Positions 462 to 56,245 of a stretch of DNA of 64,000 bases are shown here, one piece after another (the stretch's first letter is position 1; the number at the start of each line of letters is the position of its first letter). The translations under genes were made by a program, and so were the position numbers. Location: NCBI RefSeq assembly GCF_006345805.1, contig NC_043000.1, positions 137,764,001 through 137,828,000 of the forward strand, read 5' to 3'. This stretch comes from Octopus sinensis (lineage: Eukaryota). Below the pieces are notes generated by a model. It was not told the origin of the DNA. It made no database searches and saw nothing but the letters and a program-made list of their open reading frames with translations.

Positions 462-1696
462 CTAACACCACTCGCCACCTCTGAGTCCTGAGTACTCTTT
501 ATTCTTTAGTCTTTCCTTTAATGTTTTCCCCATCGCTGAATGACAACACTCTCTCCTCCATGTACTCGTAACCTTTTTTTTTACCGGGGGAGGGTCTTGT
601 AAATTTTGTAATATCTGTTGTTTCTTCTTTTTCCTATGGGGAGAGGGGCTGGGTGGGTTTGGTGTCTGTATGGGGAGGGTGTGTCTGAGTGGTCGTGTGT
701 GAGATGGAGTTGGTCTGGGGTCCCACATTACACTGACTGTTCTTCGTCTTCTTTCGCTTTTTCCTTTTATTCTCTGTCACTGTGCATTCATCCTCCTTGT
801 TCCTTCTATCTATCTGTACTTCTTCCTTTTTCTCCTCCGTTTCCACCACCGCTTCTTCTGTCGTTTTCCTCTGTAGAGGACAGTGCGCTCTAAAGTGGCC
901 TTTTTGGGCAAATTTAAAGCCTCGCGGAAATCTGCCTTCTACCCATACTCTCAAAACAATTTCTCTCAACGTCACCGTCTCCGCCAAATTTTCCAGCTGC
1001 TTCGCCTCCGCTTGTACGATGAATTCCAATGCTTTCCCTCTACATCCTCCTTCCGCCATCTCTGTGGCTTGGAGGACAGCCACCTCCTCCTCACTACCAA
1101 CGTGGGTGGTTGCCGCAACCCAAGCCATTTCTATATCGGATGGTATTCCTTCTACTCTCACCTTAGAAGTCTTTCTTCCAAGGTACGAGGGTAGAAGTAC
1201 CACTTCCTCCGTTTTTACAGTTGCACGCACCAGCCTCTTTGCCTCCTCCGCTGTACTAAACTGGACAATCACCGTCCCATATCTATTTCCTTTCGTTATG
1301 TATGTCATTTCCTTCGAAAGGTTTTTCAGTGCTTTTTCTATATTTCGGTATCCATCTGTTCCACTGAGTACACCTTGTAAGTAATGGTCTTCTTTTCCAT
1401 ATTTTCCACAACCCTTTACGGGGTAATAACTTCACGTCACTGCCCACCTTCTGGGTCATCTTAATCAGCTCCTTCAATCCGGCTAGGTTCACACCCCTTT
1501 TCTTTACCTCTGCAGACTCAGCAAAACACTTTACTCTTTTCAAATGCTCGTCTATTCTATTTACCGCCTTAACGAGCTCCTCCTCTGTTGAGGACAGCTC
1601 ATACTCGCTGAGATCTGAATACATTTTTTCTACCGATATAACACCCACTGACAAACCGCTACCAATCAGCACAAATAATTCCGTCAGTCTTGTCAA
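462..1696 (-). mobile_element. Decayed gag-like ORF1 of a non-LTR retrotransposon (L1/Tx1-like), no ORF2 present
   Basis: Overlapping frameshifted ORFs 1283..1696, 634..1308 and 462..728. Degenerate zinc knuckle RGFKFAQKGHFRAHCP (CX2CX4HX4C with the first two Cys lost), RRM-like N-terminal part and K/E-rich C-terminus. Confidence 0.7.
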
Positions 1697-2878: not shown

Positions 2879-3112
2879 TGAGGTTACCGTGGTCTTTTCC
2901 GTAGGCTTTTTCCACTGATAAACCTTATCTGTTTCCCCTTTAAACTTTACATCATGACATTTCTGTGATACACGATCCCTATTGATCGTTTTTTTTACGA
3001 TCCCTTTTGATTGAAAACCTACTCCCACCTATTTTTCTCCCCGAAAAGTAAAGCTCTACATTGTAATTTGTCCCCTATGTGTTCAGTCCTGTGTGGCTAA
3101 TAAAGAAACATA
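2879..3112 (+). mobile_element. Probable LINE 3' UTR fragment ending in a SINE-B-like tail
   Basis: Ends TTGTCCCCTATGTGTTCAGTCCTGTGTGGCTAATAAAGAAA, resembling the SINE-B 3' end but attached to unrelated upstream sequence. Confidence 0.5.
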
Positions 3113-3144: not shown

Positions 3145-3488
3145 TACTTGTTTCAGTCATTTGACTGCGGTCATGCTGGGGCACCGCCTTCAAGCGTTTT
3201 AGTCGAGCAAGTCGAAAACAATTCTTTAAGCCTAGAACTTATTTTATTGGGCTCGTTTTGGTGAACGCTAGGTTACAGGGAAGTAAACACACCAACACCT
3301 TGTAGTCAAGCGATGGTGGCGGACAAATGCAGACAACAGACAGACAGATACACACACATGCACGCACACACACAAAAACACACACACACGACGGTCTTCT
3401 TTCAGCTTCCCTCTACCATATCCACTCACAAGCCTTTGGTCGACCCCAAGCTATAGTAGAAGACATTTGCTCACGATGCCACGCAGTG
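3145..3488 (-). mobile_element. tRNA-SINE family A, head missing
   Basis: Matches the body and tail of full copies (e.g. 52676-53085); internal (CA)n. Confidence 0.85.
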
Positions 3489-10800: not shown

Positions 10801-11161
10801 GGAGATTCTCTAAGGAAAAGACTTGGTCTATTCTATCAGATCAATCTAAAGAAAAGTGATGAAATGAATAAAATATCACAGAATATTTAGAAATGTGTTG
10901 TTTGCATTAGCACAACGTCGTTCAGATTTCCATCACAAAAATACGAAATGGGGAAAAGGAAGACAAAAAGAGATGAGCAACGGAGAAAGAGATAAAATGA
11001 TATTGCTACAAAATAGAATTGTTAGCTTCTAGTCTCCTTATGCATTATGCTGCGAAAAGACACCATCACAAAACAGAACCTGCCCTAAGTACCTGGTTGA
11101 AATGAAACGATATCAAAGAAAAATATTACTACTACTACTACTACTAATAATAATAATAATA

Positions 11162-11380
11162 ATCCTTTCTACTATAGGCACAAGGCCTGAAATTTGTGGG
11201 GAGGAGACTAGTCGATTACATCGACCCCCCAGTGTTTCCCGGGTACTTATTTCATCGACCCTGAAAGGAAGAAAGGCAAAATGGACCACGGCAGAATTTG
11301 AACTCTGAACGTCAAAGCGGATGAAATGCCGATAGACATCTCACCCGGCGTGCTAACGATTTTGCCAGCTCTCTGCCTTA
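11162..11380 (-). mobile_element. tRNA-SINE family B, alternative-tail subfamily
   Basis: A box TGGCAAAATCG, B box GAGTTCAAATTC, same body as family B with a different 3' tail. Confidence 0.85.
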
Positions 11381-15000: not shown

Positions 15001-16419
15001 TAAATTTTCTTATATAGTGTGTTTTTAAGTATACTTCGTAATATATGGACTATATTAAGAAGTGCTCATTGCGAGATAAATCCTTGTATGATTTCCCTTA
15101 TCCTCTCTCTCTCTCTCACACACACACCCTGTCACTTCTATTCTAGCCTTTCTACTTATTTTTTCTCTCTCTTTCCCTCTTATATTCCTAGCCTTTCCTC
15201 TTCCCCTTCTTCCACTTTCCCCTTCTTTTCTCTGTCGTACCTTCTCCCTGCTATCTTTCTCCTCTGCCTGCTGCTGTCACGTAACCAGCGACCAGTTCCT
15301 CTTTTTCTTCCTCTCTTAGACTTGTCCCTTAGCTGACCAATCGCAAATTCTCTCTCTCCCTTCTCCATCCTTCAAAATATTTTCGAAACGTTACCCACCC
15401 TTCCCGTCTTCTTGGCCCCAATGCCGTATTTTGTTCGACTGTTTGTCCTCGTCCATTGCCCTAAATTACACTGTGTCGTTTTGCTTGCTTTGTTTCATTT
15501 GTGACATACAACTAACCATATTAAAATCTCACGAAATGCTACTCATGGAATGTTGTTGAAATGGAAACTAATCAATATCCTCACAGTTCCATAAATTTAC
15601 TGAAGACCTACATTGTCCAGATTATGTATGAAATATATAAAGAACATTTAGTGCAAGTATTAAGATGTTACCAGTCTGGGATTGAAACAACCATCGAAGA
15701 TGAAAGCATATTCACAGATTTACACATAGATTAATAAGGTCAAATCTGGAATTCAATAAACTTGTTATAGTTCACACCATGTTTATCTTGTAGATATATA
15801 TATATATATATTGTGTAGGTAACACACTATTGTTATATTTGTTAAAATGTCAGTCTTCAAGATTGTCAAATAGAGTGGGGTTTCCTGTTTTCGGGTTGAG
15901 AATGGTAATAAGCTGCTATTTTATATTTTCTTGTTTCTTTCTCATCAGAGATATGTGTTCATAGAGAGCATCTCATCACCTCACTGTCTAGAAGAGACTA
16001 ATGATAGCTACGAAATATCATATAAAATAAATTGAAACCTTAACAATTGGAAGATCATGGTCATTCTATCTTACGGAAAAATAAGATTCAAGGTTATAGT
16101 GTTAAAAAAGATTATCAATTCCAGAACTTCGGACAACCTCAGAAGGGACTAATGGAGAACATAAATATTAAAAGCTTTTAATAAAAGGCAGCTGCTACAT
16201 ATTTATTTACAGATAACTATTGATATGCTACACTTAGTATTTGTATCAGTTCATCAGAGTTTATAAATGCATTTTCATCAATAGGTGTTTTGTAAACCTG
16301 CTTTCTAACTATCTGAATTACGGGGATGCCATAGTACCTCTTCGCATGCAGACACACATTCACACACCTGCACTCAAACACACATACGTATATATGTGTA
16401 TATGCATATATGTATATAT

Positions 16420-16966
16420 GTCACGCTGGTGAGACCCATATTGGAGTATGGGATGCAAGCCTCTTCTCCTTATCTCCTCAAAGACATACAGCATCTCGAA
16501 AGAGTCCAGAAGCTGGCTACCCGCATGGTTCTTCGTCTCAAAAATGTGTCCTACGAAGACAGGCTGAGGACGCTCGACCTTTATTCTCTTGAAAAACGCC
16601 GCCGCCGTGGTGATCTCATTCTCGCCCAGAACATCATAAGCGGAAAGTGTAACCTCTCGAAAGAGTTGTTCTTCACTCCTGCTCCAGAGCGTCGGCTGCG
16701 GGGTCATTCCGAAAAGCTCTACCTGCAAGGATTTCATCTCAATCGAAGGAGAGGAGCTTTCTCCGTCCGGGTTGCGGATCCGTGGAACAAGCTGCCAGAC
16801 GAGATGGTGAAGATGCCGACGACCGCTTTGTCAAAGTCACCCTTGACCTCAAGTGGCCTGAACTCTTTACATGAACACCACCCTGTACGTAACTCCATGT
16901 CCCCCTACATGGCCTTGCTATTTGCTTTTGAGCCAAATTAACTAACTAACTAACTAACTAACTAAC
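16420..16966 (+). mobile_element. 5'-truncated CR1-clade LINE, 3' end with (TAAC)n tail
   Basis: RPILEY...LERVQKLATRM...SYEDRL...SLEKRRRRGDLI...RGH..KL...FSVRVADPWNKLP; tail at 16938-16966. Confidence 0.92.
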
Positions 16967-17822: not shown

Positions 17823-18586
17823 GTTAAGTTAATTTTTTGGCTCAAAAACCAAAAAGCAAGGCCATGTAGGGGGACATGGAGTTATGTACAGGGAGGGTGA
17901 TCATGCAAAGAGTTCAGGCCATTTCTGGTCAAGAGAGACTTTGAACCGAGCGGTCGTCGGCATCTTCACTATCTCGTCCGGCAGCTTATTCCACGGATCC
18001 GCAACCCGGACGGAGAAAGCCCCTCTCCTTCGATTGAGATGAAATCGTCGCAGATAGAGCTTTTCGGAGTAACCCCGCAGCCGACGCTCAGGAGCAGGAG
18101 TGAAGAACAGCTCTTTCGAGAGGTTACACTTTCCGCTTATGATGTTGTGAGCAAGAATGAGATCACCACGGCGTCGTCGTTTTTCTAGAGAATAAAGAAC
18201 GAGCGTCTTCAGCCTTTCTTCATAAGACAAATCCTTGAGACCAAGAATCATGCGGGTAGCCAGCTTCTGGACTCTTTCGAGATGATGTATGTCTTTGAGG
18301 AGATAAGGAGAAGAGGCTAGAATCCTGTACTCCAATACGGGTCTCACCTGCGTGACATGGAGCGGTAGGAATATGGCTGGTGTGAGCATTCTGAATGACC
18401 GCCGAATCAAAAACAGAACTCCGCGTGCTTTGTTGGCAGCACGGACGCACTGGGCCGAAGGCGAAAAGGAAGAATCCACCAAGATACCCAGGTCCTTTAC
18501 CTGGTCGGTCCTATCTAGCAGCAGACGACCCGGCTCGAAATCAAGTTGAGTTGCAGGAGAAGAGCCAACAGGCAGATGACAGCACT
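17823..18586 (-). mobile_element. 5'-truncated CR1-clade LINE, same family as 16420-16966, opposite orientation
   Basis: ORF 17901..18482 (KDLGILVDS...RPVLEY...RGDLI...WNKLP), with the same 3' UTR and TTAAC tail. Confidence 0.92.
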
Positions 18587-22755: not shown

Positions 22756-23400
22756 ATATATACTATATATATATACCTATATATATATATAATACATATT
22801 ATATATAATCTATATATATTGATATATACTATATATATATATACATATATATATATATAACAATATATCTATATATACACTACATATATATATACATATA
22901 TAACATATATACATACTATATATATGCATACATATATAAATATATACATACATATTATATATACCTACATACTATATATATACATACATATATAGATATA
23001 TATACATACATATATATATGTACATACATATATATATATGTACATACATATATATATATATACATACTATATATATATATTATACATACATATATATATA
23101 TATACATACATATATATATATGTACAACATCTTTTCATACATGTATATTATATATATATACATACATATATATATATATACATACATATATATATATGTA
23201 CATCTCTTTTCATACATATATATATATGTACATACATATAATATATATATACATACATATATATATATATATATATACATACATAATATATATATATACA
23301 TACATACATATATATACATATATACATACATATACATATATATACATATATACATATACTATATATACAATATATATATATATATATATCATATATATAT
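22455..23400. repeat. About 950-bp TA/TACA cryptic microsatellite field
   Basis: Almost only TA/CA units; continues at 24172-24400 beyond the LINE insertion. Confidence 0.95.
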
Positions 23401-24171
23401 AAACTCTCGCGGCGTCCAACAACATCAGAGACTTGGGATTATTGTGGACAACACCATAAGCTGGGCCACCCATATAAACACCAAAGTTGACATGGCCCGC
23501 AGAATGTGTTCCTGGATTCTCAGAACTTTTCAGTCGAGAGATATCCACACCATTATCCTTCTCTTCTCCACTTTTGCCCGTACCCACCTTGAATACTGTT
23601 GTCCACTGTGGGTCTCCCCACACAATACAAGTATCATAAAAGTTGAAGCACTCAAAGGGCAATCACAAAAAAGATAGATGGCATGACAGGCCTCGACTAT
23701 TGGGGTCGACTAGAAAAGCTAAAACTCTATTCTCTCAACGTCGTCGTGAGCGCTACATCATCTGCATGATGTGGAAAATATTCCATCAGCATTGCCCAAA
23801 TGATTTTGGCATCACCTTTAAGGTACATCCAGGCTTGGGCCCCGTGCCATCCGCCCAAAACAAAATCGCACTCTCATCTCAAACAACAATACGGCACAAT
23901 TATTTCACCTCAATTGGCCCCGCTCTCTTTAACATTACACCAAAACACATTAAAACAGAAACTGACCCTATAGGTTCAAGAGTCTTTGGACAGATTCCTC
24001 AAGAAATCCCGGATAAACCCCCTACACCCGGATATGTCTCTGTAAACAATAACTCTCTACTTGAGTGGGCCATAGTGCCCAAATTCTGACTTGAAAGACT
24101 TCACCAGGTGGTGCTATTAAGTTAGACATGCCTGGCCATGAACAAACAAAAAAATTAACAAATTAACAAAC
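23401..24171 (+). mobile_element. 5'-truncated, frameshifted CR1/L2-group LINE, a different family from the 16-18 kb pair
   Basis: [16 protein letters not shown]...WILRTF...[11 protein letters not shown], then RRRERY...GPALFNI..; short 3' UTR and TTAACAAA tail. Confidence 0.88.
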
Positions 24172-25320: not shown

Positions 25321-25719
25321 TACTCTTTTACTCTTTTACTTTTTCAGTCATTTGACTGCGGCCATGCTGGAGCACCGCCTTTGGTCGAGCAAATCGACCC
25401 CGGGACTTATTATTTGTAAGCCCAGTACTTATTCTATCGGCCTCTTTTGCCGAACCGCTAAGTGAAGGGGACGTAAACACACCAGCATCGGTTATCAAGC
25501 AATGCTAGGGGGACAAACACAGACACACATACATACATATATATATACATATATACGACAGGCTTCTTTCCGTTTCCGTTTACCAAATCCACTCACAAGG
25601 CATTGGTCGGCCCGGGGCTATAGCAGAAGACACTTGCCCAAGATGCCACGCAGTGGGACTGAACACGGAACCATGTGGTTGGTTAGCAAGCTACTTACCA
25701 CACAGCCACTCCTGCGCCT
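25321..25719 (-). mobile_element. Full-length tRNA-SINE family A (CORE-like)
   Basis: A box TGGCTGTGTGG, B box GGTTCAGTCCC, CORE-like CTTGGGCAAGTG, internal microsatellite, (GTAAAAGA)n tail. Confidence 0.92.
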
Positions 25720-25992
25720 ATATACATATACACATACATATATACACATGTATCCGCACATATACCCATATATACATACACAAACATACAATTACATACA
25801 TATGCATGTACATATATATATATGTGTGAAAGAATGAGATTAATGGAAGCAACACGATCGATGCTGTCAGCCGTTTTCCCTCCCGCCCAGTTCCTAGCTT
25901 TCAGTCTGTGTTGATATGGTTCGTAGATAAATATTTATTGTCGGTATGTATTCATAAACATAAAAGATAAACATATTTAGTAATGAACTTAC

Positions 25993-26775: not shown

Positions 26776-27451
26776 AGCTTTCGCAGTATTTTTATCGGTC
26801 AACAAACATTTACATAATTATTTATACATATATACCTGTATGTATGTCTCGCATGCTGCAGGGAGCTTGTCTCCCTTGTTAGTCATAGAGGAAAAGATAA
26901 ATTCATTTCAACTCGGATTTAATACTTGGGGAGTGAACTGCAGTCGGAGTTCTCTTCCAAGTGTTACAAAATACGAAAAGTGGTTGGAGACAGGGATTGA
27001 CCTGTTGGAAGGAACAGTGTACAAAAAGTAGACAATGAGGCCACTTGTAAGTGGGGCGAGTGATTTCATTTACATTTTTCATATTCATATTGTCATACAT
27101 TCTAATATACATTTTCGTTTTATATTTTATATATTTTATGTCCTACAAGTTTTATCGTTTTGTCCCCTCTATGTTGGCCCTTTATGGGCAATAAAGAATG
27201 TCTTGTTTCCTATGTTAGTCATTATATATATAATATTATATATATATAAATAAAAAATATGCATACATACAAACATATATGTACGTACCTACATCTTACA
27301 TGTATATATACATGCATATAAGTAATATACGTGAGTACAGGACACCACAACAAGACGTAGAAACGGGGAAAAAAAAAAATTTACAACAAGAAAACAAGTA
27401 CAGGACATGCTACACAAGGAAAAATCCACCGTCATCAGCTGTTTCGAAGGC

Positions 27452-29232: not shown

Positions 29233-29657
29233 TCTTTTATTATTTTATTTGTTTCAGTCATCTGACTGTGGCCATGCTGGAGCACCACGTTAAGTGGTTT
29301 TAGTCAAACAAATCGACCTCAGGACTTATTCTTTGTAAAACTAGTATTTATTCTATCGATCACTTTTGCCGAACCGCTAGATTACGGGGGACAAAAACAC
29401 ACCATCATCGGCTGTCAAGCGATGGCCTAGAGGGGGATCAACATAGACACAAACACACAAATACATATACATATACATATATTTATCTATATAAGACGGG
29501 CTTCTTTCAGTTTCCGGCTACTAAATTCCCTCAGAAGGCTTCGGTCGGCGCGAGGCTATGATAAAAGACACTTGCCCACGGTGCCACGCAGTGGGGCAGC
29601 ACCTGGAATCATATGATTAGAAAGCAAGCACCTTACTGCACAGCCACGCCTGCGCCT
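29233..29657 (-). mobile_element. tRNA-SINE family A, older copy
   Basis: Full head-to-tail similarity to 25321-25719 with more substitutions. Confidence 0.88.
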
Positions 29658-29696
29658 ATAAATACTTACATAGGACCCCACCACACACACATATAC

Positions 29697-29911
29697 GCTT
29701 TACTCTTTACTCTTTTACTTGTTTCAGTCATTTGACTACGGCCATGCTGGAGCACCGCCTTTAGTCGAGCAAATCGACCCCGGGACTTATTCTTTGTAAG
29801 CCCAGTACTTATTCTATCGGTCTCTTTTTGCCGAACCGCTAAGTGACGGGGACGTAAACACACCAGCATCGGTTGTCAAGCAATGCTAGGGGGACAAACA
29901 CAGACACACAA

Positions 29912-29950
<39 letters not shown>

Positions 29951-30116
29951 TACGACAGGCTTCTTTCAGTTTCCGTCTACCAAATCCACTCACAAGGCAT
30001 TGGTCGGCCCGGGGCTATAGCAGAAGACACTTGCCCAAGATGCCACGCAGTGGGACTGGACCCGGAACCATGTGGCTGGTTGGCAAGCTACTTACCACAC
30101 AGCCACTCCTGCGCCT
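29697..30116 (-). mobile_element. Full-length tRNA-SINE family A, young copy
   Basis: Near-identical to 25321-25719 and 52676-53085. Confidence 0.92.
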
Positions 30117-30121
30117 ATATA

Positions 30122-37346: not shown

Positions 37347-37582
37347 GTATCTATTTCTTTACTACCCACAAGGGGCTAAACATAGAGGGGACAAAGAAGG
37401 ACAGACAAACGGATTAAATCGATTATATCGACCCCAGAGCGTAACTGGTACCTATTTAGTCGACCCCGAAAGGATGAAAGGCAAAGTCGACTTCGGCAGA
37501 ATTTGAACTCAGAACGTAGCGACAGACGAAATACAGCTAAGCATTTCGCCCGGCGTGCTAATGTTTCTGCCACCTCGCCGCC
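37347..37582 (-). mobile_element. Full-length tRNA-SINE family B
   Basis: 13-bp TSD TTATTATCCCGTT at 37334-37346 and 37583-37595. Confidence 0.93.
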
Positions 37583-37767
37583 TTATTATCCCGTTATATC
37601 GTACTTCGAACGTGCGATACGAGGGAAACTGAAAAAGCACAAGACAGATAGCATTCATGACATTTTTCAGAGTCTCCGAAACTGGAGTTAGGAAAGGGAC
37701 AATGCATCACAAACCAGCAGACCTACTCTCTATTTGACACTAAGTAATGACAGAAGAAATTTTACTT

Positions 37768-43214: not shown

Positions 43215-43560
43215 AGATAAAATGCTTAGCGATATTTCGTCCGTTTTTTAACGTTCTGAATTCAAATTCCACCGAAGTCGACCTTGCCTTTCATCCTTTC
43301 GTGGTCAATAAAATAAATAGCAGTTGATCATTGGGGGTCGATGCAACCGACTTAACCCCTCTCCCGAGATTGCTGGATTTGTACCGAAGTGTGAAGACAT
43401 TATTATTAAGCCAGTGAGCGACCAGAATCGTCAGCACGGCGGACGAAATGCTTAGAGCCATTTCGCCAATCTTACGTTCTGAGTTAAAATTCCGCCGAGG
43501 TCGACTTTGCGTACCCCCTCCTCCACGAGATTGATAAAATAAGTAGCAATTAAATACGAA
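43215..43560 (+). mobile_element. Two adjacent decayed SINE-B (alternative-tail) copies
   Basis: Repeated AAATGCTTAG...TTCTGA(A/G)TT(C/A)AAATTCC...GTCGAC blocks. Confidence 0.75.
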
Positions 43561-43817: not shown

Positions 43818-44229
43818 CTCTTATATTTTACTTATTTCAGTCATTTGACTGCGTCAATGCTGGAGCACCACCTTTTAGTCGAGCAAATCGCCCCCAGGAC
43901 TTATTCTTTGGAAGCCTAGTACTTATTCAATCGGTCTGTTTTGCCGAACCGCTAAGTCACGGGGTCTTAAACACACCATCATCGGTTGGCAAGCGATGTC
44001 GGGGGGATAAACACAGACACACAAACATACACACACACATATATATATATACATATACATATATATGAAGGGCTTCTTTCAGTTTCCGTCTACCAAATCA
44101 CTCACAAGGCTTTGGTCGGCCCGAGGCTATAGTAGATGACACTTTGCCCAAGGTCTCATGCAGTGGGACTGAACACGGATCCATGTTGCTGGTAAGCAAG
44201 CTACTTAACACACAGCCACTCCCGCACCT
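43818..44229 (-). mobile_element. Full-length tRNA-SINE family A
   Basis: Head-to-tail match to the other A copies. Confidence 0.9.
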
Positions 44230-44380
44230 AGACCTCATTATCATAGTTTTAAAAAAACATGTTCGGTCGGGTAAAATAATTTTGCACGCTTGAAAAAACG
44301 ACAGGCATCTTGAATGAGAAACAACCGATTACATCTATAATCGCACCCAGACTGTTTCTTTCTTACTCGTATACACTCAT

Positions 44381-44404
44381 GTACTAGCTACGGCGGTACA
44401 TATT

Positions 44405-44435
<31 letters not shown>

Positions 44436-44487
44436 GTGGCCTCTGCGCAAGGATGACGCGCAAATTCGTGAAGCGTTCCATATTTCT
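44381..44487 (+). pseudogene. U6: Full-length U6 snRNA retro-copy (5' part of a U6-SINE chimera)
   Basis: 107 nt with 10 differences from human U6 as recalled; ACAGAGA box and AGC triad intact; 5' stem-loop retained; 3' end TATTTCT lacks a T-run terminator; no recognisable TATA at -30. Confidence 0.93.
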
Positions 44488-44722
44488 AAAGGCGGTGAGC
44501 TGGCAGAAACGTCAGCACGCCGGGCGAAATGCCTAGCTGTATTTCGTCTGTCGTTACGTTCTGAGTTCAAATTCCGCCTAGGTCGACTTTGCCTTTCATC
44601 CTTTCGGGGTCGATAAATTAAGCACCAGTTACGCACTGGGGTCGATGTAATCGACTTAATCCCTTTGTCTGTCCTTGTTTGTCCCTTCTATGTTTAGCCC
44701 CTTGTGGGTAGTAAAGAAATAG
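44488..44722 (+). mobile_element. Full-length tRNA-SINE family B fused to U6
   Basis: Starts AAAGGCGGTGAGCTGGCAG, ends GTAGTAAAGAAATAG. TSD GTATACACTCAT(G) at 44369-44380 and 44723-44734 encloses U6 plus SINE. Confidence 0.93.
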
Positions 44723-44986
44723 GTATACACTCATGCGCGCGCGCGTGTATGCGTGTGTGCGTGTGTGCGTGTGTGCACAGATGGAGGAAAGAAAAACGAG
44801 GAGGAGAAGGGTTATTCATTCTGGGAAATTTTCAAAGGCCAAGTAATATATCTAAATTACTGTTAACTTTAATCAAAATCGACGATATTGCGTGAGAAGG
44901 TAAAATAATATTGTGTAAAGTAATTTAAATGAAATAATATTGTTTACATAATGAAGAATCATTCAGTTTACTGTTAGAAGATGTGT

Positions 44987-45378
44987 GGAGGCGCAACGGC
45001 CCAGTGGTTAGGGCAGCGGACTCGCGGTCATAGGATCGCGGTTTCGATTCCCAGACCGGGCGTTGTGAGTGTTTATTGAGCGAAAACACCTAAAAGATCC
45101 ACGAGGCTCCGGTAGAGGATGGTGGTGATCCCTGCCGTACTCTTTCACCACAACTTTCTCTCACTCTTACTTCCTGTTTCTGTTGTACCTGTATTTCAAA
45201 GGGCCGGCCTTGTCACTCTCTGTGTCACGCTGAATATCCCCGAGAACTACGTTAAAGGTGTACGTGTCTGTGGAGTGCTCAGCCACTTACACGTTAATTT
45301 CACGAGCAGGCTGTTCCGTTGATTCGGATCAACCGGAACCTTCATCGTCGTTACCGACGGAGTGCTTCCATCATCATC
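44987..45378 (+). mobile_element. Full-length tRNA-SINE family C
   Basis: A box CGGCCCAGTGG, B box GGTTTCGATTCC, (CAT)n tail, 11-bp TSD AGAAGATGTGT at 44976-44986 and 45379-45389. Confidence 0.93.
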
Positions 45379-45607: not shown

Positions 45608-45923
45608 ACTCTTCTACTCTTTTACTCTTTTACTTGTTTCAGTCATTTGACTGCGGCCATGCTGGAGCACCGCCTTTAATCGAGCAACTCGACCCCGGGA
45701 CTTATTCTTTGTAAGCCCAGTACTTATTCTATCGGTCTCTTTTGCCGAACCGCTAAGTGACGGGAACATAAACACACCAGCATCGGTTGTCAAGCAATGC
45801 TAGGGGGACAAACACAAACATACACGCGCACACACATATACATATATATACATATATACGACGGGCTTCTTTCAGTTTCCGTCTAGCAAATCCACTCACA
45901 AGGCTTTGGTCAGCCCGAGGCTA
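45608..45923 (-). mobile_element. 5'-truncated SINE-A
   Basis: Tail and body match; head absent. Confidence 0.88.
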
Positions 45924-46381: not shown

Positions 46382-46443
<62 letters not shown>

Positions 46444-46614
46444 GCATATATACGACGGGCTTCTTTCAGTTTCCGGTTACCAGATCCACTCACGAGGCTT
46501 TGGTCGACCCGAGGCTATAGTAGAAGACACTTGCCCAAGGTGCCACGCAGTGGGACTGAACCCGGAACCATGTGGTTTGTAAGCAACTACTTACCACACA
46601 GCCATTCCTACACC
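46119..46614 (-). mobile_element. Full-length SINE-A with an expanded internal (CA)n/(TA)n
   Basis: Head-to-tail match. Confidence 0.9.
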
Positions 46615-47052
46615 TATTCACATTCTTTAATAATTGTTGATTTCTTTGTTCGAAAGTAACGAGAAATTATGCTTATATGCCTTACATAAACATGTTAATG
46701 TATTCGTGAATTGGAACGAGAACTTCTACTTGAATGTGGCATCTACTCTATTGATCTAATTAGCGAATGAGTTCGAAGGAATACATTGTTATTCGGTCCT
46801 CGTGATGAGAGACTGAAGTAAAAGAAATGATTTATCGCTATAGAAATTTCTGTAATTTTTCGCCAGAGATAAGGTGGCCAGCTGTCACGATTTAGCAGCT
46901 AAAATGTCTTTCTGTCTCGCGTCCTAAAGGAAAAAGGAAACATATACGAGATGATTTAACCCTAGATGATCCTCACAAAGACAATGTTGTCACTGGTAAA
47001 ATTCATTTGATCCTCGTTCTCTATCAGGTTGATCTCGGTCTAAAGAAATAAA

Positions 47053-47469
47053 TAAGGCGGTGAGCTGGCAGAATCGTTAGCACGCTGGGCGAAATGCTTA
47101 GTGGTATTTTGTCTGCCGTTACGTTCTGAGTTCAAATTCCGCCGAAGTCGACTTTGCCTTTCATCCTTTCGGGGTCGATAAATTAAGTACCAGTTACGCA
47201 CTGGGGTCAACGTAATCGACTTAATCCGTTTGTCTGTCCTTGTTTGTCCCCTCTATGTTTAGCCCTTATGGGCAATAAAGAAATACGTATTTTGTCTGCC
47301 GTTACGTTCTTAGTTCAAATTCCGCCGAGGTCGACTTTGCCTTTCATCCTTTCGGGGTCGATAAATTAAGTACCATTTACGCACTGGGGTCAACGTAATC
47401 GACTTAATCCGTTTGTCTGTCCTTGTTTGTCCTCTATATGTTTAGCCCCTTGTGGGTAGTAAAGAAAAA
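47053..47469 (+). mobile_element. SINE-B head-to-tail dimer (full unit plus headless unit)
   Basis: Second unit restarts at GTATTTTGTCTGCC (about 47287); 16-bp TSD GGTCTAAAGAAATAAA at 47037-47052 and 47470-47485. Confidence 0.9.
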
Positions 47470-49879
47470 GGTCTAAAGAAATAAAGCAAAAATTATAACG
47501 TCCCATAGTAATACGTTCGTGTACTATGTGGATCGTTGTGATTTTAAATCATAGAGTAATAATTTAAAGTATGAGCCTGCTGAACCAGTTTCGATTACAT
47601 AATAATGAAGAAAAATGAACAGCATGAAATGCTCTCAAACGTTAACAGTCATTCATCAGGTTATTATCATCGATTTCACTAATATAGTGGAATATTGAAC
47701 GCTTGTATTGGGTGTACATGATAATATTTCGATTTAACTGCATGGTATCTTCTTGTCCAACTATTTATAATTTAACAATAAGTTAAGTAAAAGCACTGGA
47801 TCTCTCCTACTATTCAAGAGTGTGTACTTATAGACTCATTAAATAAATGTACATGATAACGTAGATATGTTTGTGATACGCAGCTCTTAGATCAAACAGA
47901 GGCCTCCATTTGAGGAGAGATCATAATTTGACCTTCAAATTTGACCTGCGAATTGACAAAGAATTGAAATAATATTCCCAAGAACCTCGTGGCTTATCGG
48001 TGAAAGCAATGAAGATTAGTACCATTTAAAATTGACTAATTATCTGAGGTGATGACAATGACTTCAGTTAATCCTTTTTGTTTAATTTTGTGTAATTATA
48101 AGCGGAAATCAATAGAAATCGTTAGGCGGTAAATTAAAACTTTGATCAGGCTATATTCATTAACCACTTCAATTAGAGATAACTTTCAATGAACACTTTT
48201 AGTTTTCATTAATTCTATTCACTTGATTAAAATAGACTATGCTTAGAATTCTATTACTTCAGAGAGTACATTAAAACCTGACCTGGGAGTTTCACCAAAC
48301 TAAGGGATTATTGCTTTCATTATCAGTTTATCGTTTTGTGCAGACAAATCCACTGGCCCTGTTCTAATACATATTATACATTTCAGATTATACACGTTTG
48401 TTTTCAGGTAACTTATCTCAGGTTGATATCTGGTTAATGATAACTTAGAATTGACAATAGACAATGTTCTACAGAATATGTATATTATTTGAACATATAC
48501 TTAGACTTTAGTAATATCACTAGAATTCGGATATTTATTTCCAGGAATAAAATCCAGAATCCATGGAAATGCGTGCGGATCGGAGGTATCATCGTTAATT
48601 ATTAAGTCCAATAGAGTGTTTAGTTTCTAACAAGGCGAGAAAATCTATACTTTCGAACATTATTTAACGAAACTATCAATGAAGTTGTGTGCCAAGTATC
48701 AGATTTTATCACTCCTCATTCCCTGGGATTTAAGTAGGCACAGATTTGCTGAAATCTCTGATCTTATATCTTTGTGATTTTATCAGAAATATCTTTACAG
48801 CCAAAATATAGTAGTTTGTAGACACCGAGTGTAAGGATACTTAGTTATATGTCTATGTAATAAGGAATTCGTTCCAAATGTAATAGCATACATTTAATAA
48901 TTTAATGTAGTAATACGGTTAATTGAGTCAGAATAGAAAGTTAGAAATTTCACTAATGCTAATCAGTTACTGTGTACTTTTAGAATCAGCAAAGTTCCAT
49001 ACAGCTAATACTTTCATGAAAACCGCTCAAGTATTCAGCAAGAGGCATCATGTCTTTATATCCAATCTGAAAACATTCATATTAATCTGAACAAGAACGA
49101 TTCTACTGCACACATTTGACTCACCTGTGGTCGGAAACTTCTAATTAGTTGTTCGTTTCACTTTCTAGCTCAGAAACTATTCGCAACGACAGATGAGTGT
49201 TCAACTTCTCAGCTGTAATGATGTGTTACAGCTCTTCAAATATTTTAATGAGATTGATATAGTTCAGAAGCACTGAAGGTTTACTGTTAATAGTAAGCTA
49301 CTTCGACAAGTTAATACCGAAATAACCTACCCTTAACAGGCTGAATTTCTCAAATATTATTTCGACTGCAACAGAAAATCCAACTGTAACTATTTGATAT
49401 CTATTACGCTTAAAAAGAAAAAAAAAGATTTGCGTACATTACATAGCATAGTATTATTAATGAAACTATTTTAATACTGCATAATATGACACCTTTCAAG
49501 AATGCTAAGGTACTAAAAGTATAATTGAACATGAGCATTCTCATGCAAGGTGGGTAATTTCATAAATGATATATCAGAGGAATTAATGTGCATGTGTATT
49601 CCAAGTTAAGTTGATAATAAAATAACAAAGCCTCATAAAAATATACTTGTAACATTGTTTCACTTCCATAAATTTTACATATATAACGAATATTTATTCT
49701 AGCCCAACCTTTTTTTCTGTTTTAAAGTCAACATAAATTTAACGAGTGTAAAAAATAATTTTTTTTCACTCGATACAACAGTCAACGGAATTTTCCTTTA
49801 CAATAAAGCAATAAATAAAATCCAGGTGTATTTATTGGGACTTACCTATTCACTCGTTTACTAATACCTGTTAATATGA

Positions 49880-50270
49880 TTTGTTTAAATCGTTAGCACA
49901 CTGGATGAAATGTTTAGTGGCATTTCGTCCGTCTTTACGTTCTGAGTTTACATTCAGCTGGAGTCGACGGGTCGATTAAAAAAGTACCAGTTGAACAGTG
50001 GGTTCGATTTAATCGACTTAGCACCTCTCCCAAAGTTGCTGTTCTTGTACCAAAGTCTGAAACCAATATTATTTATTTGGTCAAGGCGGCGAGCACTAAT
50101 TCGTCCGTCTTTACCTTCCGAGTTCGAATTCCGCCGAAGTCGACTTTGTATTTCATCATTTCATGGTCGATGAAATAAGAAGCAGTTGAGTACTGCGGGC
50201 TATGTAATTGACTTATCCCACCCCCCGAAGTTGCTGGCCTTGTGCCAAAATTTGAAATCAATATTATTTA
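49880..50270 (+). mobile_element. Two adjacent decayed SINE-B (alternative-tail) copies
   Basis: Each has a B-box region and a CCAAA..TGAAA(C/T)CAATATT tail. Confidence 0.75.
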
Positions 50271-52466: not shown

Positions 52467-52675
52467 TATTGTAATAAAGATTCCTTTCTCCTTTGTGTAA
52501 TTAGTCCGAGAAGAAAAATATAATAAGAAACCATTCATTCAGGTTGACTTGATTATTTAGTAAATGCTTTAAAGGGTTTCATGCTTGTTTCATATTACCT
52601 CAGCATATATATGATAATAAGTGAATGAATTGTAAAAAGCTTTTGATCTTAATATCCTTTTAGCTTTCATGACAT

Positions 52676-53085
52676 AGGCGCAGGAGTGGCTGTGTGGTAA
52701 GTAGCTTGCTAACCAACCACATGGTTCCGGGTTCAGTCCCACTGCGTGGCATCTTGGGCAAGTGTCTTCTGCTATAGCCCCGGGCCGACCAATGCCTTGT
52801 GAGTGGATTTGGTAGACGGAAACTGAAAGAAGCCTGTCGTATATATGTATATATGTATATATATATATGTATGTGTGTGTGTTTGTGTGTCTGTGTTTGT
52901 CCCCACCCCAGCATTGTTTGACAATCGATGCCGGTGTGTTTACGTCCCCGTCACCTAGCGGTTCGGCAAAAGAGACCGATTGAATAAGTACTGGGCTTAC
53001 AAAAAATAAGTCCCGGGGTCGAGTTGTTCGACTAAAGGTGGTGCTCCAGCATGGCCGCAGTCAAATGACTGAAACAAATAAAAAA
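52676..53085 (+). mobile_element. Full-length tRNA-SINE family A, young copy
   Basis: AGGCGCAGGAGTGGCTGTGTGG head through TGACTGAAAC tail. Confidence 0.93.
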
Positions 53086-53617: not shown

Positions 53618-53850
53618 TATTTCTTTACTATCCACAAGGGGCTAAACATAGAGGGGACAAGCAAGGACAGACAAACGGATTAAGTCGATTACATCGACCC
53701 CAGTGCGTAACCGGTACTTAATTTAACGACCCCGAAAGGATGAAAGGCAAAGTCGACCTCGGCGGAATTTGAACTCAGAACGTAACCGCAGACGAAATAC
53801 GGCTACGCATTTCGCCCGGTGTGCTAACGTTTCTGCCAGCTTGCCGCCTT
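53618..53850 (-). mobile_element. Full-length SINE-B
   Basis: Near-consensus copy inserted in a TA run. Confidence 0.92.
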
Positions 53851-55837: not shown

Positions 55838-56245
55838 CCTAAATATTGGTTTCAAATTTCGGCGCAAGGCCAGCATTTTTGGGGGAGAGGATAAGTCAAT
55901 TACATCAACCACAATGCTCAACAGGCACGTATATTATCATCTCCGAAAGAATGAAAGGCAAAGTTGACCAAGGGGGAATTTCAACTCAGAATATATACAC
56001 GAACGAAATACTTATTTCTTTACTATCCACAATGGGGCTAAACACAGAGGGGACAAACAAGGACAGACAAACGGATTAAGTCGATTACATCGACCCCAGT
56101 GCGTAACTGGTTCTTAATTTATCGACCCCGAAAGGATGAAAGGCAAAGTCGACCTCGGCGGAATTTGAACTCAGAACGTAACGGCAGACGAAATACAGCA
56201 ACGCATTTCGCCGGCGTGCTAACGATTCTGCCAGCTCGTCGCACT
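55838..56245 (-). mobile_element. SINE-B (56245->56013) joined to a headless older alternative-tail SINE-B (56012->55838)
   Basis: Minus-strand junction ...GTAAAGAAATAA|GTATTTCGTTC... Confidence 0.85.

What the first reader, a model, noticed from the sequence alone, without database searches (positions are those of the whole stretch)
44369..44734. Full-length U6 snRNA fused to a full-length tRNA-SINE inside one target-site duplication
Seen: a complete 107-nt U6 (44381-44487) runs straight into an intact SINE-B head, and one TSD GTATACACTCAT(G) brackets both parts. This is best explained by a single co-integration rather than a SINE landing behind a U6 gene. Known: U6/L1 chimeric pseudogenes in mammals arise by template switching or by RtcB ligation at the U6 2',3'-cyclic-phosphate end, and snRNA-headed SINEU families (U1/U2) exist in crocodilians. 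I know of no U6-SINE chimera described in cephalopods. Inference: either a one-off ligation or template-switch product made by a non-L1 LINE machinery, or a member of an amplified U6-headed SINE family. The lost T-run (TATTTCT) would allow Pol III read-through, and the SINE supplies internal A/B boxes.
Basis: partly seen in the sequence, partly recalled or inferred. Interest (0 to 1): 0.82.

Follow-up and report, generated by a model that had tools for sequence, protein, structure and literature searches.

The report
U6 snRNA–SINE chimeric retrocopy in octopus
A complete copy of the spliceosomal U6 RNA and a complete octopus SINE were pasted into the genome together in one retrotransposition event. 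This kind of by-product of LINE reverse transcription is already known from platypus and lizard, so it is real and tidy but ordinary apart from its host.

Summary
Rfam finds a full-length U6 at 44381-44487 (99.9 bits; gathering score 44). It abuts a full-length copy (44488-44722) of a SINE that has at least five other near-full copies in the window. An exact 13-bp direct repeat, GTATACACTCATG (44369-44381 and 44723-44735), brackets the pair. Neither part has a duplication of its own, so this was one integration event.

The SINE copies end in ...GTAGTAAAGAAATA(G) with no poly(A) and carry 13-19 bp target-site duplications. The enzyme was therefore a tail-specific, non-L1-type LINE machinery.

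The junction joins the mature U6 3' end (a 5-nt U-tract, now TTTCT) to the normal 5' end of the SINE. I favour an end-to-end template jump of the reverse transcriptase. RNA ligation or a read-through transcript remain possible.

I found no support for an amplified U6-headed SINE family. The window holds one copy, the U6 has no promoter upstream, and the SINE's internal promoter would start transcription downstream of U6.

U6 chimeras with SINEs moved by non-L1 LINEs are already published (platypus Mon-1, Anolis AnolisSINE2; Doucet et al. 2015). This is a new member of a known kind, possibly the first noted in a mollusc.

The tools held almost no octopus DNA, so genome-wide copy number and the orthologous empty site could not be tested.

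The parts
44369..44381 (+). 5' copy of the target-site duplication GTATACACTCATG (the last G is shared with U6 nucleotide 1)
   Evidence: Exact 13-mer repeated at 44723-44735. Chance about 2e-8 per register.
44381..44487 (+). Full-length U6 snRNA retrocopy, 107 nt, with a 3' U-tract that now reads TTTCT. It has no upstream U6 promoter.
   Evidence: Rfam RF00026, 99.9 bits, model 1-105. Gap-free and the same length as human U6, with 10 differences, 5 of them in the 5' stem-loop and including a compensated pair. The TSD abuts nucleotide 1; the only TATA-like motif is at -45/-40.
44488..44722 (+). Full-length SINE ('SINE-B'). The A at 44488 is either the first SINE nucleotide (the O. vulgaris copy also starts AAAGGCG) or one untemplated nucleotide. 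It ends in the family's own tail ...GTAGTAAAGAAATAG with no poly(A).
   Evidence: End-to-end alignment with 5 other copies. 7 differences in 232 positions from the local consensus. O. vulgaris copy L001 10142-10375. No run of four or more T between 44300 and 44829.
44723..44735 (+). 3' copy of the target-site duplication GTATACACTCATG, followed by a (CG)n(TG)n microsatellite

Best explanation
This is a one-off bipartite retro-pseudogene. During target-primed reverse transcription at a nick 5' of GTATAC, the reverse transcriptase of the LINE that mobilises this SINE family copied a full-length SINE RNA from its specific 3' tail to its 5' end. This LINE is tail-specific, uses no poly(A), and is therefore of non-L1 type. 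The enzyme then continued without dissociating on the 3' end of a mature U6 snRNA (an end-to-end template jump) and copied U6 to its first nucleotide. Second-strand synthesis produced the 12-13 bp TSD.

Shown: full-length U6, full-length SINE, one TSD, no TSD for either part alone, the same TSD length class and target motif as solo SINE copies, and no poly(A).

Inferred: the order of events, and the choice of template switching over ligation.

The product is dead on arrival. U6 lost its external promoter, and the SINE's internal promoter would transcribe only the SINE part.
For: U6 and SINE are both complete and in the same orientation, and one exact 13-bp TSD brackets them.

No direct repeat flanks U6 alone or the SINE alone. 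The U6 3' end GTTCCATATTTCT does not match the 3' flank, and the 5' TSD does not match the SINE head.

Solo copies of the same SINE have TSDs of 15-19 bp, where they can be read, that also begin GTATA/ATATA/GTCTA.

The same window holds a SINE-SINE chimera inside one 15-bp TSD (47038-47485). This machinery therefore makes bipartite insertions.

The junction lies at the mature U6 3' end (5-nt U-tract) and at the native SINE 5' end, plus or minus 1 nt. That is what an end-to-end jump predicts.

U6/SINE chimeras made by L2-type machinery are documented in platypus and Anolis (PMC4476161).

RtcB ligation needs a 5'-OH and is strongly reduced by a 5'-triphosphate (PMC6789731).

The SINE part is 3.0% from the local consensus. 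The U6 core differs from the pan-eukaryotic U6 at 5 of 88 positions, 4 of them transitions. These figures are compatible with both parts having one age.
Against: Template switching and prior RNA ligation leave the same DNA product, and nothing here separates them directly.

The true octopus U6 gene sequence and the partner LINE were not available, so the equal age of the two parts and the LINE clade are unproven.

The orthologous empty site and the genome-wide copy number could not be examined. One window cannot exclude further copies.
Confidence: 0.8

Rival explanations
1. RNA ligation before reverse transcription. Mature U6 ending in a 2',3'-cyclic phosphate was joined by an RtcB-type ligase to a SINE RNA, and the chimeric RNA was then retrotransposed through the SINE tail.
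For: This mechanism is demonstrated for human U6/L1 and for U6 joined to other RNAs (PMC6789731). U6 is complete to its U-tract, as in ligation products.
Against: RtcB needs a 5'-OH acceptor, and a 5'-triphosphate strongly reduces ligation. The SINE part begins at the same nucleotide (plus or minus 1) as independent full-length copies, which is the native Pol III 5' end and is expected to carry a triphosphate.
Confidence: 0.15
2. Read-through transcript (5' transduction). A genuine U6 gene elsewhere acquired this SINE right at its terminator. Pol III started from the U6 external promoter, read through the weakened T-run into the SINE, and that RNA was retrotransposed.
For: The U-tract reads TTTCT and there is no run of four or more T until 44829. 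A transcript could therefore run through U6 and the SINE.
Against: It requires a SINE to have landed exactly at the last nucleotide of mature U6. That source insertion would have left its own TSD between U6 and the SINE, and none is seen: there is 0-1 nt between them. The T-to-C change can equally be a later substitution, since the other three single-base differences between positions 25 and 107 are also transitions.
Confidence: 0.06
3. Member of an amplified U6-headed SINE family, analogous to the SINEU families with U1/U2 heads.
For: The SINE body carries B-box-like sequence, and small-RNA heads have been added to SINEs before (PMC4494074). A genome-wide count could not be done.
Against: The window has one U6 against at least six SINE-B copies. 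No internal promoter has been reported for snRNA genes. A type-2 promoter in the SINE starts transcription downstream of U6, so daughter copies would lose the head. This last point rests on established Pol III biology and is an inference here. No ORF spanning U6 and SINE was found in the 5.8 G and 1.84 G protein libraries, but that test was weak.
Confidence: 0.04
4. Two independent events: a SINE inserted next to a pre-existing U6 gene or pseudogene, or the reverse, and the flanking repeat is coincidental.
For: SINEs are very dense here, and nested or adjacent insertions are common in the window.
Against: An exact, non-simple 13-mer lies precisely at both outer boundaries (about 2e-8 per register). 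There is no inner duplication around either part and no U6 promoter upstream.
Confidence: 0.02

Closest known systems
U6/SINE and U6/non-L1-LINE chimeric pseudogenes of platypus (U6-Mon-1, U6-L2) and Anolis (U6-AnolisSINE2, U6-L2, U6-RTE); 'Group IV' snRNA copies of Doucet et al. 2015 (PMC4476161)
   Same: U6 lies in sense orientation at the 5' side, fused at its 3' end to a SINE mobilised by a tail-specific non-L1 LINE. The whole unit sits inside one TSD and has no poly(A).
   Different: The host is a cephalopod mollusc and the SINE family is different. Here both U6 and the SINE are full length, whereas platypus U6 parts are mostly 5'-truncated. The TSD is long (12-13 bp), whereas platypus L2 events give 1-9 bp. 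The partner LINE is unidentified.
Mammalian U6/L1 chimeric pseudogenes (Buzdin 2002/2003; Moldovan et al. 2019, PMC6789731)
   Same: A full-length U6 ending in its U-tract is joined to a retrotransposon sequence within a single TSD.
   Different: The 3' partner there is a variably 5'-truncated L1 with a poly(A) tail made by L1 ORF2p, and RtcB ligation to 5'-OH fragments is shown. Here the partner is a complete SINE with a native 5' end and no poly(A).
SINEU families (U1/U2-headed SINEs of crocodilians; Kojima 2015, PMC4494074)
   Same: An snRNA-derived sequence sits at the 5' end of a SINE body.
   Different: SINEU elements are amplified families with shared head-body junctions. Here only a single copy is known, the head is U6 (Pol III, external promoter), and nothing suggests it propagates.
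SINE-SINE chimera in the same window (47038-47485)
   Same: Two retroposon RNAs were copied in tandem inside one 15-bp TSD by the same tail-specific machinery.
   Different: Both parts are SINEs and the 3' part is 5'-truncated at a hairpin loop. It may instead be a dimeric subfamily.

Membership tests
U6 spliceosomal snRNA (Rfam RF00026) | Sequence and structure match to the covariance model above the gathering score, over the full length | tested here: met
   99.9 bits against 44, model positions 1-105, all five 5' stem pairs standard.
U6 spliceosomal snRNA (functional gene) | External type-3 Pol III promoter (PSE and a TATA box near -30) and a T-run terminator | tested here: not met
   The TSD abuts nucleotide 1. 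The only TATA-like hexamer is at -45/-40, and the terminator reads TTTCT. It is a retrocopy, not a gene.
Chimeric U6-retrotransposon pseudogene (Doucet 2015 Group IV) | U6 in sense orientation, joined at its 3' end to a LINE or SINE sequence | tested here: met
   U6 ends at 44487 and the SINE starts at 44488/9 on the same strand.
Chimeric U6-retrotransposon pseudogene (Doucet 2015 Group IV) | One TSD flanks the whole chimera and neither part has its own | tested here: met
   13-bp exact repeat at 44369-44381 and 44723-44735, with no inner repeats.
Chimeric U6-retrotransposon pseudogene (Doucet 2015 Group IV) | The empty orthologous or allelic site has a single copy of the TSD | not testable with these tools
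   No octopus genome collection was on hand. Metagenome contigs lacks even the SINE core.
tRNA-derived SINE (SINE2) | A 5' head recognisable as a tRNA with A and B boxes | tested here: inconclusive
   ARAGORN finds no tRNA, and there is no Rfam tRNA hit at E<=10. A B-box-like GAGTTCAAATTCC and an acceptor-like pairing are present, and the head folds into a stable structure, z = -4.9.
SINE (any) | Short, non-coding, many dispersed copies with defined ends and TSDs | tested here: met
   At least 6 copies in the window and one in O. vulgaris, with common ends and TSDs of 13-19 bp.
SINE (any) | 3' tail shared with a partner LINE | tested here: inconclusive
   The 42-nt tail alone recurs at 3067-3108 and 27159-27198 behind unrelated sequence. 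No reverse-transcriptase ORF could be tied to it.
snRNA-headed SINE family (SINEU-like) | Multiple copies sharing the same head-body junction with different TSDs | tested here: not met
   One copy in 64 kb and none in the protein-library proxies. The genome-wide test was not possible.

The most novel reading that the evidence does not exclude
The locus could be one copy of a propagating U6-headed SINE lineage. Alternatively it could be one of many recurrent U6-SINE chimeras that mark an unusually jump-prone cephalopod LINE reverse transcriptase. A propagating lineage would be the first SINE with a U6 head, and the first snRNA-headed SINE outside crocodilians.
Probability: 0.05. Interest if true: 0.65.

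Novelty: new member of a known kind. Interest (0 to 1): 0.3.

Why it matters
It shows that joining U6 snRNA to a retroposon template also operates with a tail-specific LINE machinery in a lophotrochozoan. Until now this was documented in mammals, platypus and a lizard. That supports the view that such joining is a general property of non-LTR reverse transcription and a route by which SINEs acquire new heads. In practice, U6 chimeras could serve as dated markers of LINE and SINE activity in octopus genomes, where SINEs are abundant. On its own, a single dead copy has no functional consequence.

Tried and rejected
(1) Other U6-SINE copies through proteins. The junction is open in the + frame (44341-44613, 91 aa). 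I searched it in the 5.8 G-protein library and in the 1.84 G representatives. The listed hits were almost all U6-only ORFs of many eukaryotes, plus SINE-only ORFs from Octopus vulgaris and O. bimaculoides. None spanned both parts. The window's own ORF is not in the library either, so this test has almost no sensitivity.

(2) Metagenome contigs. The junction pattern gave 0 hits. A control with a 32-mer, invariant in six of the seven aligned window copies, also gave 0 hits. The collection has no octopus DNA, so the negative result means nothing.

(3) Orthologous empty site. I looked for a host exon in the window to reach sister-species loci through the look-up of encoding contigs. ORF lists show only repeat-derived, LINE-like or low-complexity frames, so I abandoned this route.

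(4) Partner LINE. Pfam found nothing on seven LINE-like ORFs. The two tail-only matches share no upstream sequence with each other. The clade is undetermined.

(5) tRNA origin of the SINE head. ARAGORN and Rfam were both negative.

(6) The sub-threshold miRNA-family hits next to the 3' TSD (mir-3149, mir-297 and others) are artefacts of the (CG)n(TG)n microsatellite.

(7) A literature search for U6 chimeras in molluscs or cephalopods found none in the held library.

Full report
**What is in the sequence.** Reading 44100-45000 and scanning the whole window with Rfam gives a single match above threshold. It is U6 spliceosomal RNA (RF00026) at 44381-44487 on the + strand, 99.9 bits against a gathering score of 44. 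It covers model positions 1-105 and is not truncated. A permissive re-scan of 44300-44800 and of the whole window adds only sub-threshold miRNA-family hits on microsatellites. There is no second U6, no other snRNA and no tRNA. The U6 copy is 107 nt long. The two differ at 10 positions. Five lie in the lineage-variable 5' stem-loop and include a compensated pair (G3A with C17U). Five lie in the conserved body at positions 24, 56, 62, 78 and 106, and four of these are transitions. ORF translations of U6 genes from many eukaryotes independently show the conserved body as ...KDDTQIREAFHIF, against ...KDDAQIREAFHIS here. That confirms two of the changes as departures from the general U6. The last change turns the terminal T-run into TTTCT.

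**The SINE part.** BLASTN of 44488-44722 against the window finds near-full-length copies at 91-94% identity. They lie at 37351-37584(-), 47054-47285(+), 53618-53850(-) and 56013-56237(-), with a 5'-truncated copy at 47287-47470 and several older relatives. Their flanks and the alignment show common ends. The copies start (A)AAGGCGG and end ...TTTAGCCCCTTGTGGGTAGTAAAGAAATA(G), with no poly(A) and no simple-repeat tail. The chimera's SINE therefore starts within one nucleotide of the native 5' end. The A at 44488 is either an untemplated nucleotide or part of the element. A copy fetched from Octopus vulgaris chromosome OX597819.1 also starts AAAGGCG. The chimera's SINE ends exactly at the native 3' end and differs from the local consensus at 7 of 232 positions. 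Two protein-library hits that are really SINE translations come from O. vulgaris and O. bimaculoides, so this is an Octopus SINE. Its tRNA origin is not confirmed by tools. ARAGORN finds nothing and Rfam gives no tRNA hit at E<=10. Only a B-box-like GAGTTCAAATTCC and an acceptor-like pairing are visible, and the head folds stably (z = -4.9).

**The duplication.** GTATACACTCATG occurs exactly at 44369-44381 and 44723-44735. These positions are immediately before U6 nucleotide 1, sharing its G, and immediately after the last SINE nucleotide. From base composition, the probability of this 13-mer at one fixed register is 2e-8. In a scan of 1.9 million boundary-anchored tests across the window, only 8 non-simple exact 13-mers appeared, and four of them belong to another genuine TSD. 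The looser test gave 0.44%, but that figure is inflated by the window's microsatellites. Neither part has a duplication of its own. The sequence before the SINE (the U6 3' end) does not recur after it, and the sequence before U6 does not recur after U6. Solo copies of this SINE have TSDs of similar size: 15 bp at 37351, and 19 bp with two mismatches in O. vulgaris. A 15-bp TSD brackets the SINE pair at 47038-47485. All these TSDs begin GTATA, ATATA or GTCTA, as this one does.

**How it most likely arose.** The missing poly(A) and the precise family-specific 3' end point to a tail-recognising, non-L1-type LINE. Its identity could not be established. Pfam found nothing on the LINE-like ORFs. The two other places that carry only the 42-nt tail (3067-3108 and 27159-27198) share nothing upstream. 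The junction joins the mature 3' end of U6 (a five-nucleotide U-tract) to the native 5' end of the SINE RNA. That is what an end-to-end template jump of the reverse transcriptase would produce after it runs off the SINE template. Such jumps are the classical explanation for U6 chimeras (PMC4476161).

The alternative shown for human U6/L1 is RtcB ligation of U6 carrying a 2',3'-cyclic phosphate to an RNA with a 5'-OH. It is strongly reduced when the acceptor has a 5'-triphosphate (PMC6789731). A SINE part that starts at the native transcript 5' end is expected to have exactly that triphosphate, so I rank ligation second.

A read-through transcript from a U6 gene with a SINE at its terminator is possible in principle. 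There is no run of four or more T from 44300 to 44829. But this scenario needs a prior insertion exactly at the last U6 nucleotide, with no trace of its own TSD.

The same window contains a second bipartite insertion. A full SINE plus a SINE starting at consensus position ~51 sit inside one 15-bp TSD at 47038-47485. This shows that the machinery does produce chimeras.

**Family or one-off.** Nothing supports an amplified U6-headed family. The window has one U6 against at least six copies of the SINE. The U6 copy has no promoter, because the TSD abuts nucleotide 1 and the only TATA-like hexamer sits at -45/-40. No internal promoter has been reported for snRNA genes (PMC4494074). From established Pol III biology, a type-2 promoter in the SINE would start transcription at the SINE 5' end, so daughter copies would lose the U6.

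My attempts to count copies elsewhere failed for lack of octopus DNA in the collections. The junction ORF found no U6+SINE-spanning protein in the 5.8 G library or among the 1.84 G representatives, but the window's own ORF is absent there too. The metagenome collection lacks even the SINE core. No host exon could be found in the window to reach orthologous loci.

**Comparison with what is known.** Doucet et al. 2015 (PMC4476161) describe U6 chimeras flanked by TSDs with L2 and the SINE Mon-1 in platypus. In Anolis they describe them with L1-, L2- and RTE-like LINEs, plus six with AnolisSINE2. They conclude that the phenomenon is general to non-LTR retrotransposons. The present locus meets the defining features that could be tested: sense U6 joined at its 3' end to a SINE, and one TSD around both. 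It differs in host phylum and in SINE family. Both parts are full length here, and the TSD is longer.

SINEU families (PMC4494074) resemble it only in having an snRNA at the head, and their defining amplification is not met. A search of the held literature found no report of U6 chimeras in molluscs or cephalopods. That is weak evidence of absence.

**Verdict.** It is a new member of a known kind rather than a new kind. The family and read-through ideas are unsupported. Interest is modest (0.3). It would rise only if genome-wide searches showed many copies sharing this junction.

Noticed in passing
window 47038-47485 (+): A full-length SINE-B (47054-47285), one C, and a 5'-truncated SINE-B (47287-47470, starting GTATTT at consensus position ~51) sit inside one 15-bp TSD, GTCTAAAGAAATAAA (47038-47052 and 47471-47485). 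This is either a SINE-SINE chimera or a dimeric subfamily.
   Followed up: partly
window 55892-56237 (-): A full SINE-B is followed by one A and then an older, related SINE that starts at the same internal position (GTATTTCG). In the predicted fold of the SINE head, that position is the 3' edge of the apical hairpin loop. This suggests a recurrent RNA break point or a preferred target site.
   Followed up: partly
window 11158-11379(-), 43220-43404(+), 43408-43510(+), 49888-50070(+), 50084-50265(+): An older relative of SINE-B has the same head and body but a different tail (...GAAACCAATATTATT, (ATT)n). It often lies in tandem or is truncated. This suggests a tail swap between two LINE partners.
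   Followed up: partly
window 43900-44230 (-); also 3221-3488, 25406-25720, 29325-29658, 29786-30117, 45701-45923, 46396-46616, 52675-53010: A second abundant SINE of about 330 bp has a tRNA-like head, an ACCTTGGGCAAAGTG motif reminiscent of CORE-SINEs (a resemblance from memory, not tested) and an internal TA/TG microsatellite. One copy ends 140 bp upstream of the chimera.
   Followed up: partly
window 3067-3108 and 27159-27198 (+): The last ~42 nt of the SINE-B tail occur alone behind unrelated sequence. They may be very short 3' ends of the partner LINE, or other elements sharing the tail.
   Followed up: partly
window 16396-16941(+), 17901-18482(-), 23018-24089(+), 634-1696(-): ORF fragments resemble the C-terminal region of CR1/L2-type LINE ORF2 (...LEYG...LERVQKLATRM...SLEKRRRRGDLI), and there is a gag-like ORF. 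Pfam gave no hit. The CR1/L2 resemblance is from memory.
   Followed up: partly
window 44736-44779 (+): A (CG)n(TG)n microsatellite starts right after the 3' TSD. It produces sub-threshold Rfam hits to mir-3149, mir-297 and others. About a hundred such hits occur on microsatellites across the window, and all are artefacts.
   Followed up: yes
L001 10142-10375 (Octopus vulgaris OX597819.1): An annotated 'hypothetical predicted protein' (P0003) of O. vulgaris is an ORF whose C-terminal two-thirds translates a SINE-B copy. An O. bimaculoides 'EF-hand' protein (P0083) likewise ends in SINE-B translation. These look like annotation artefacts or exonised SINEs.
   Followed up: no
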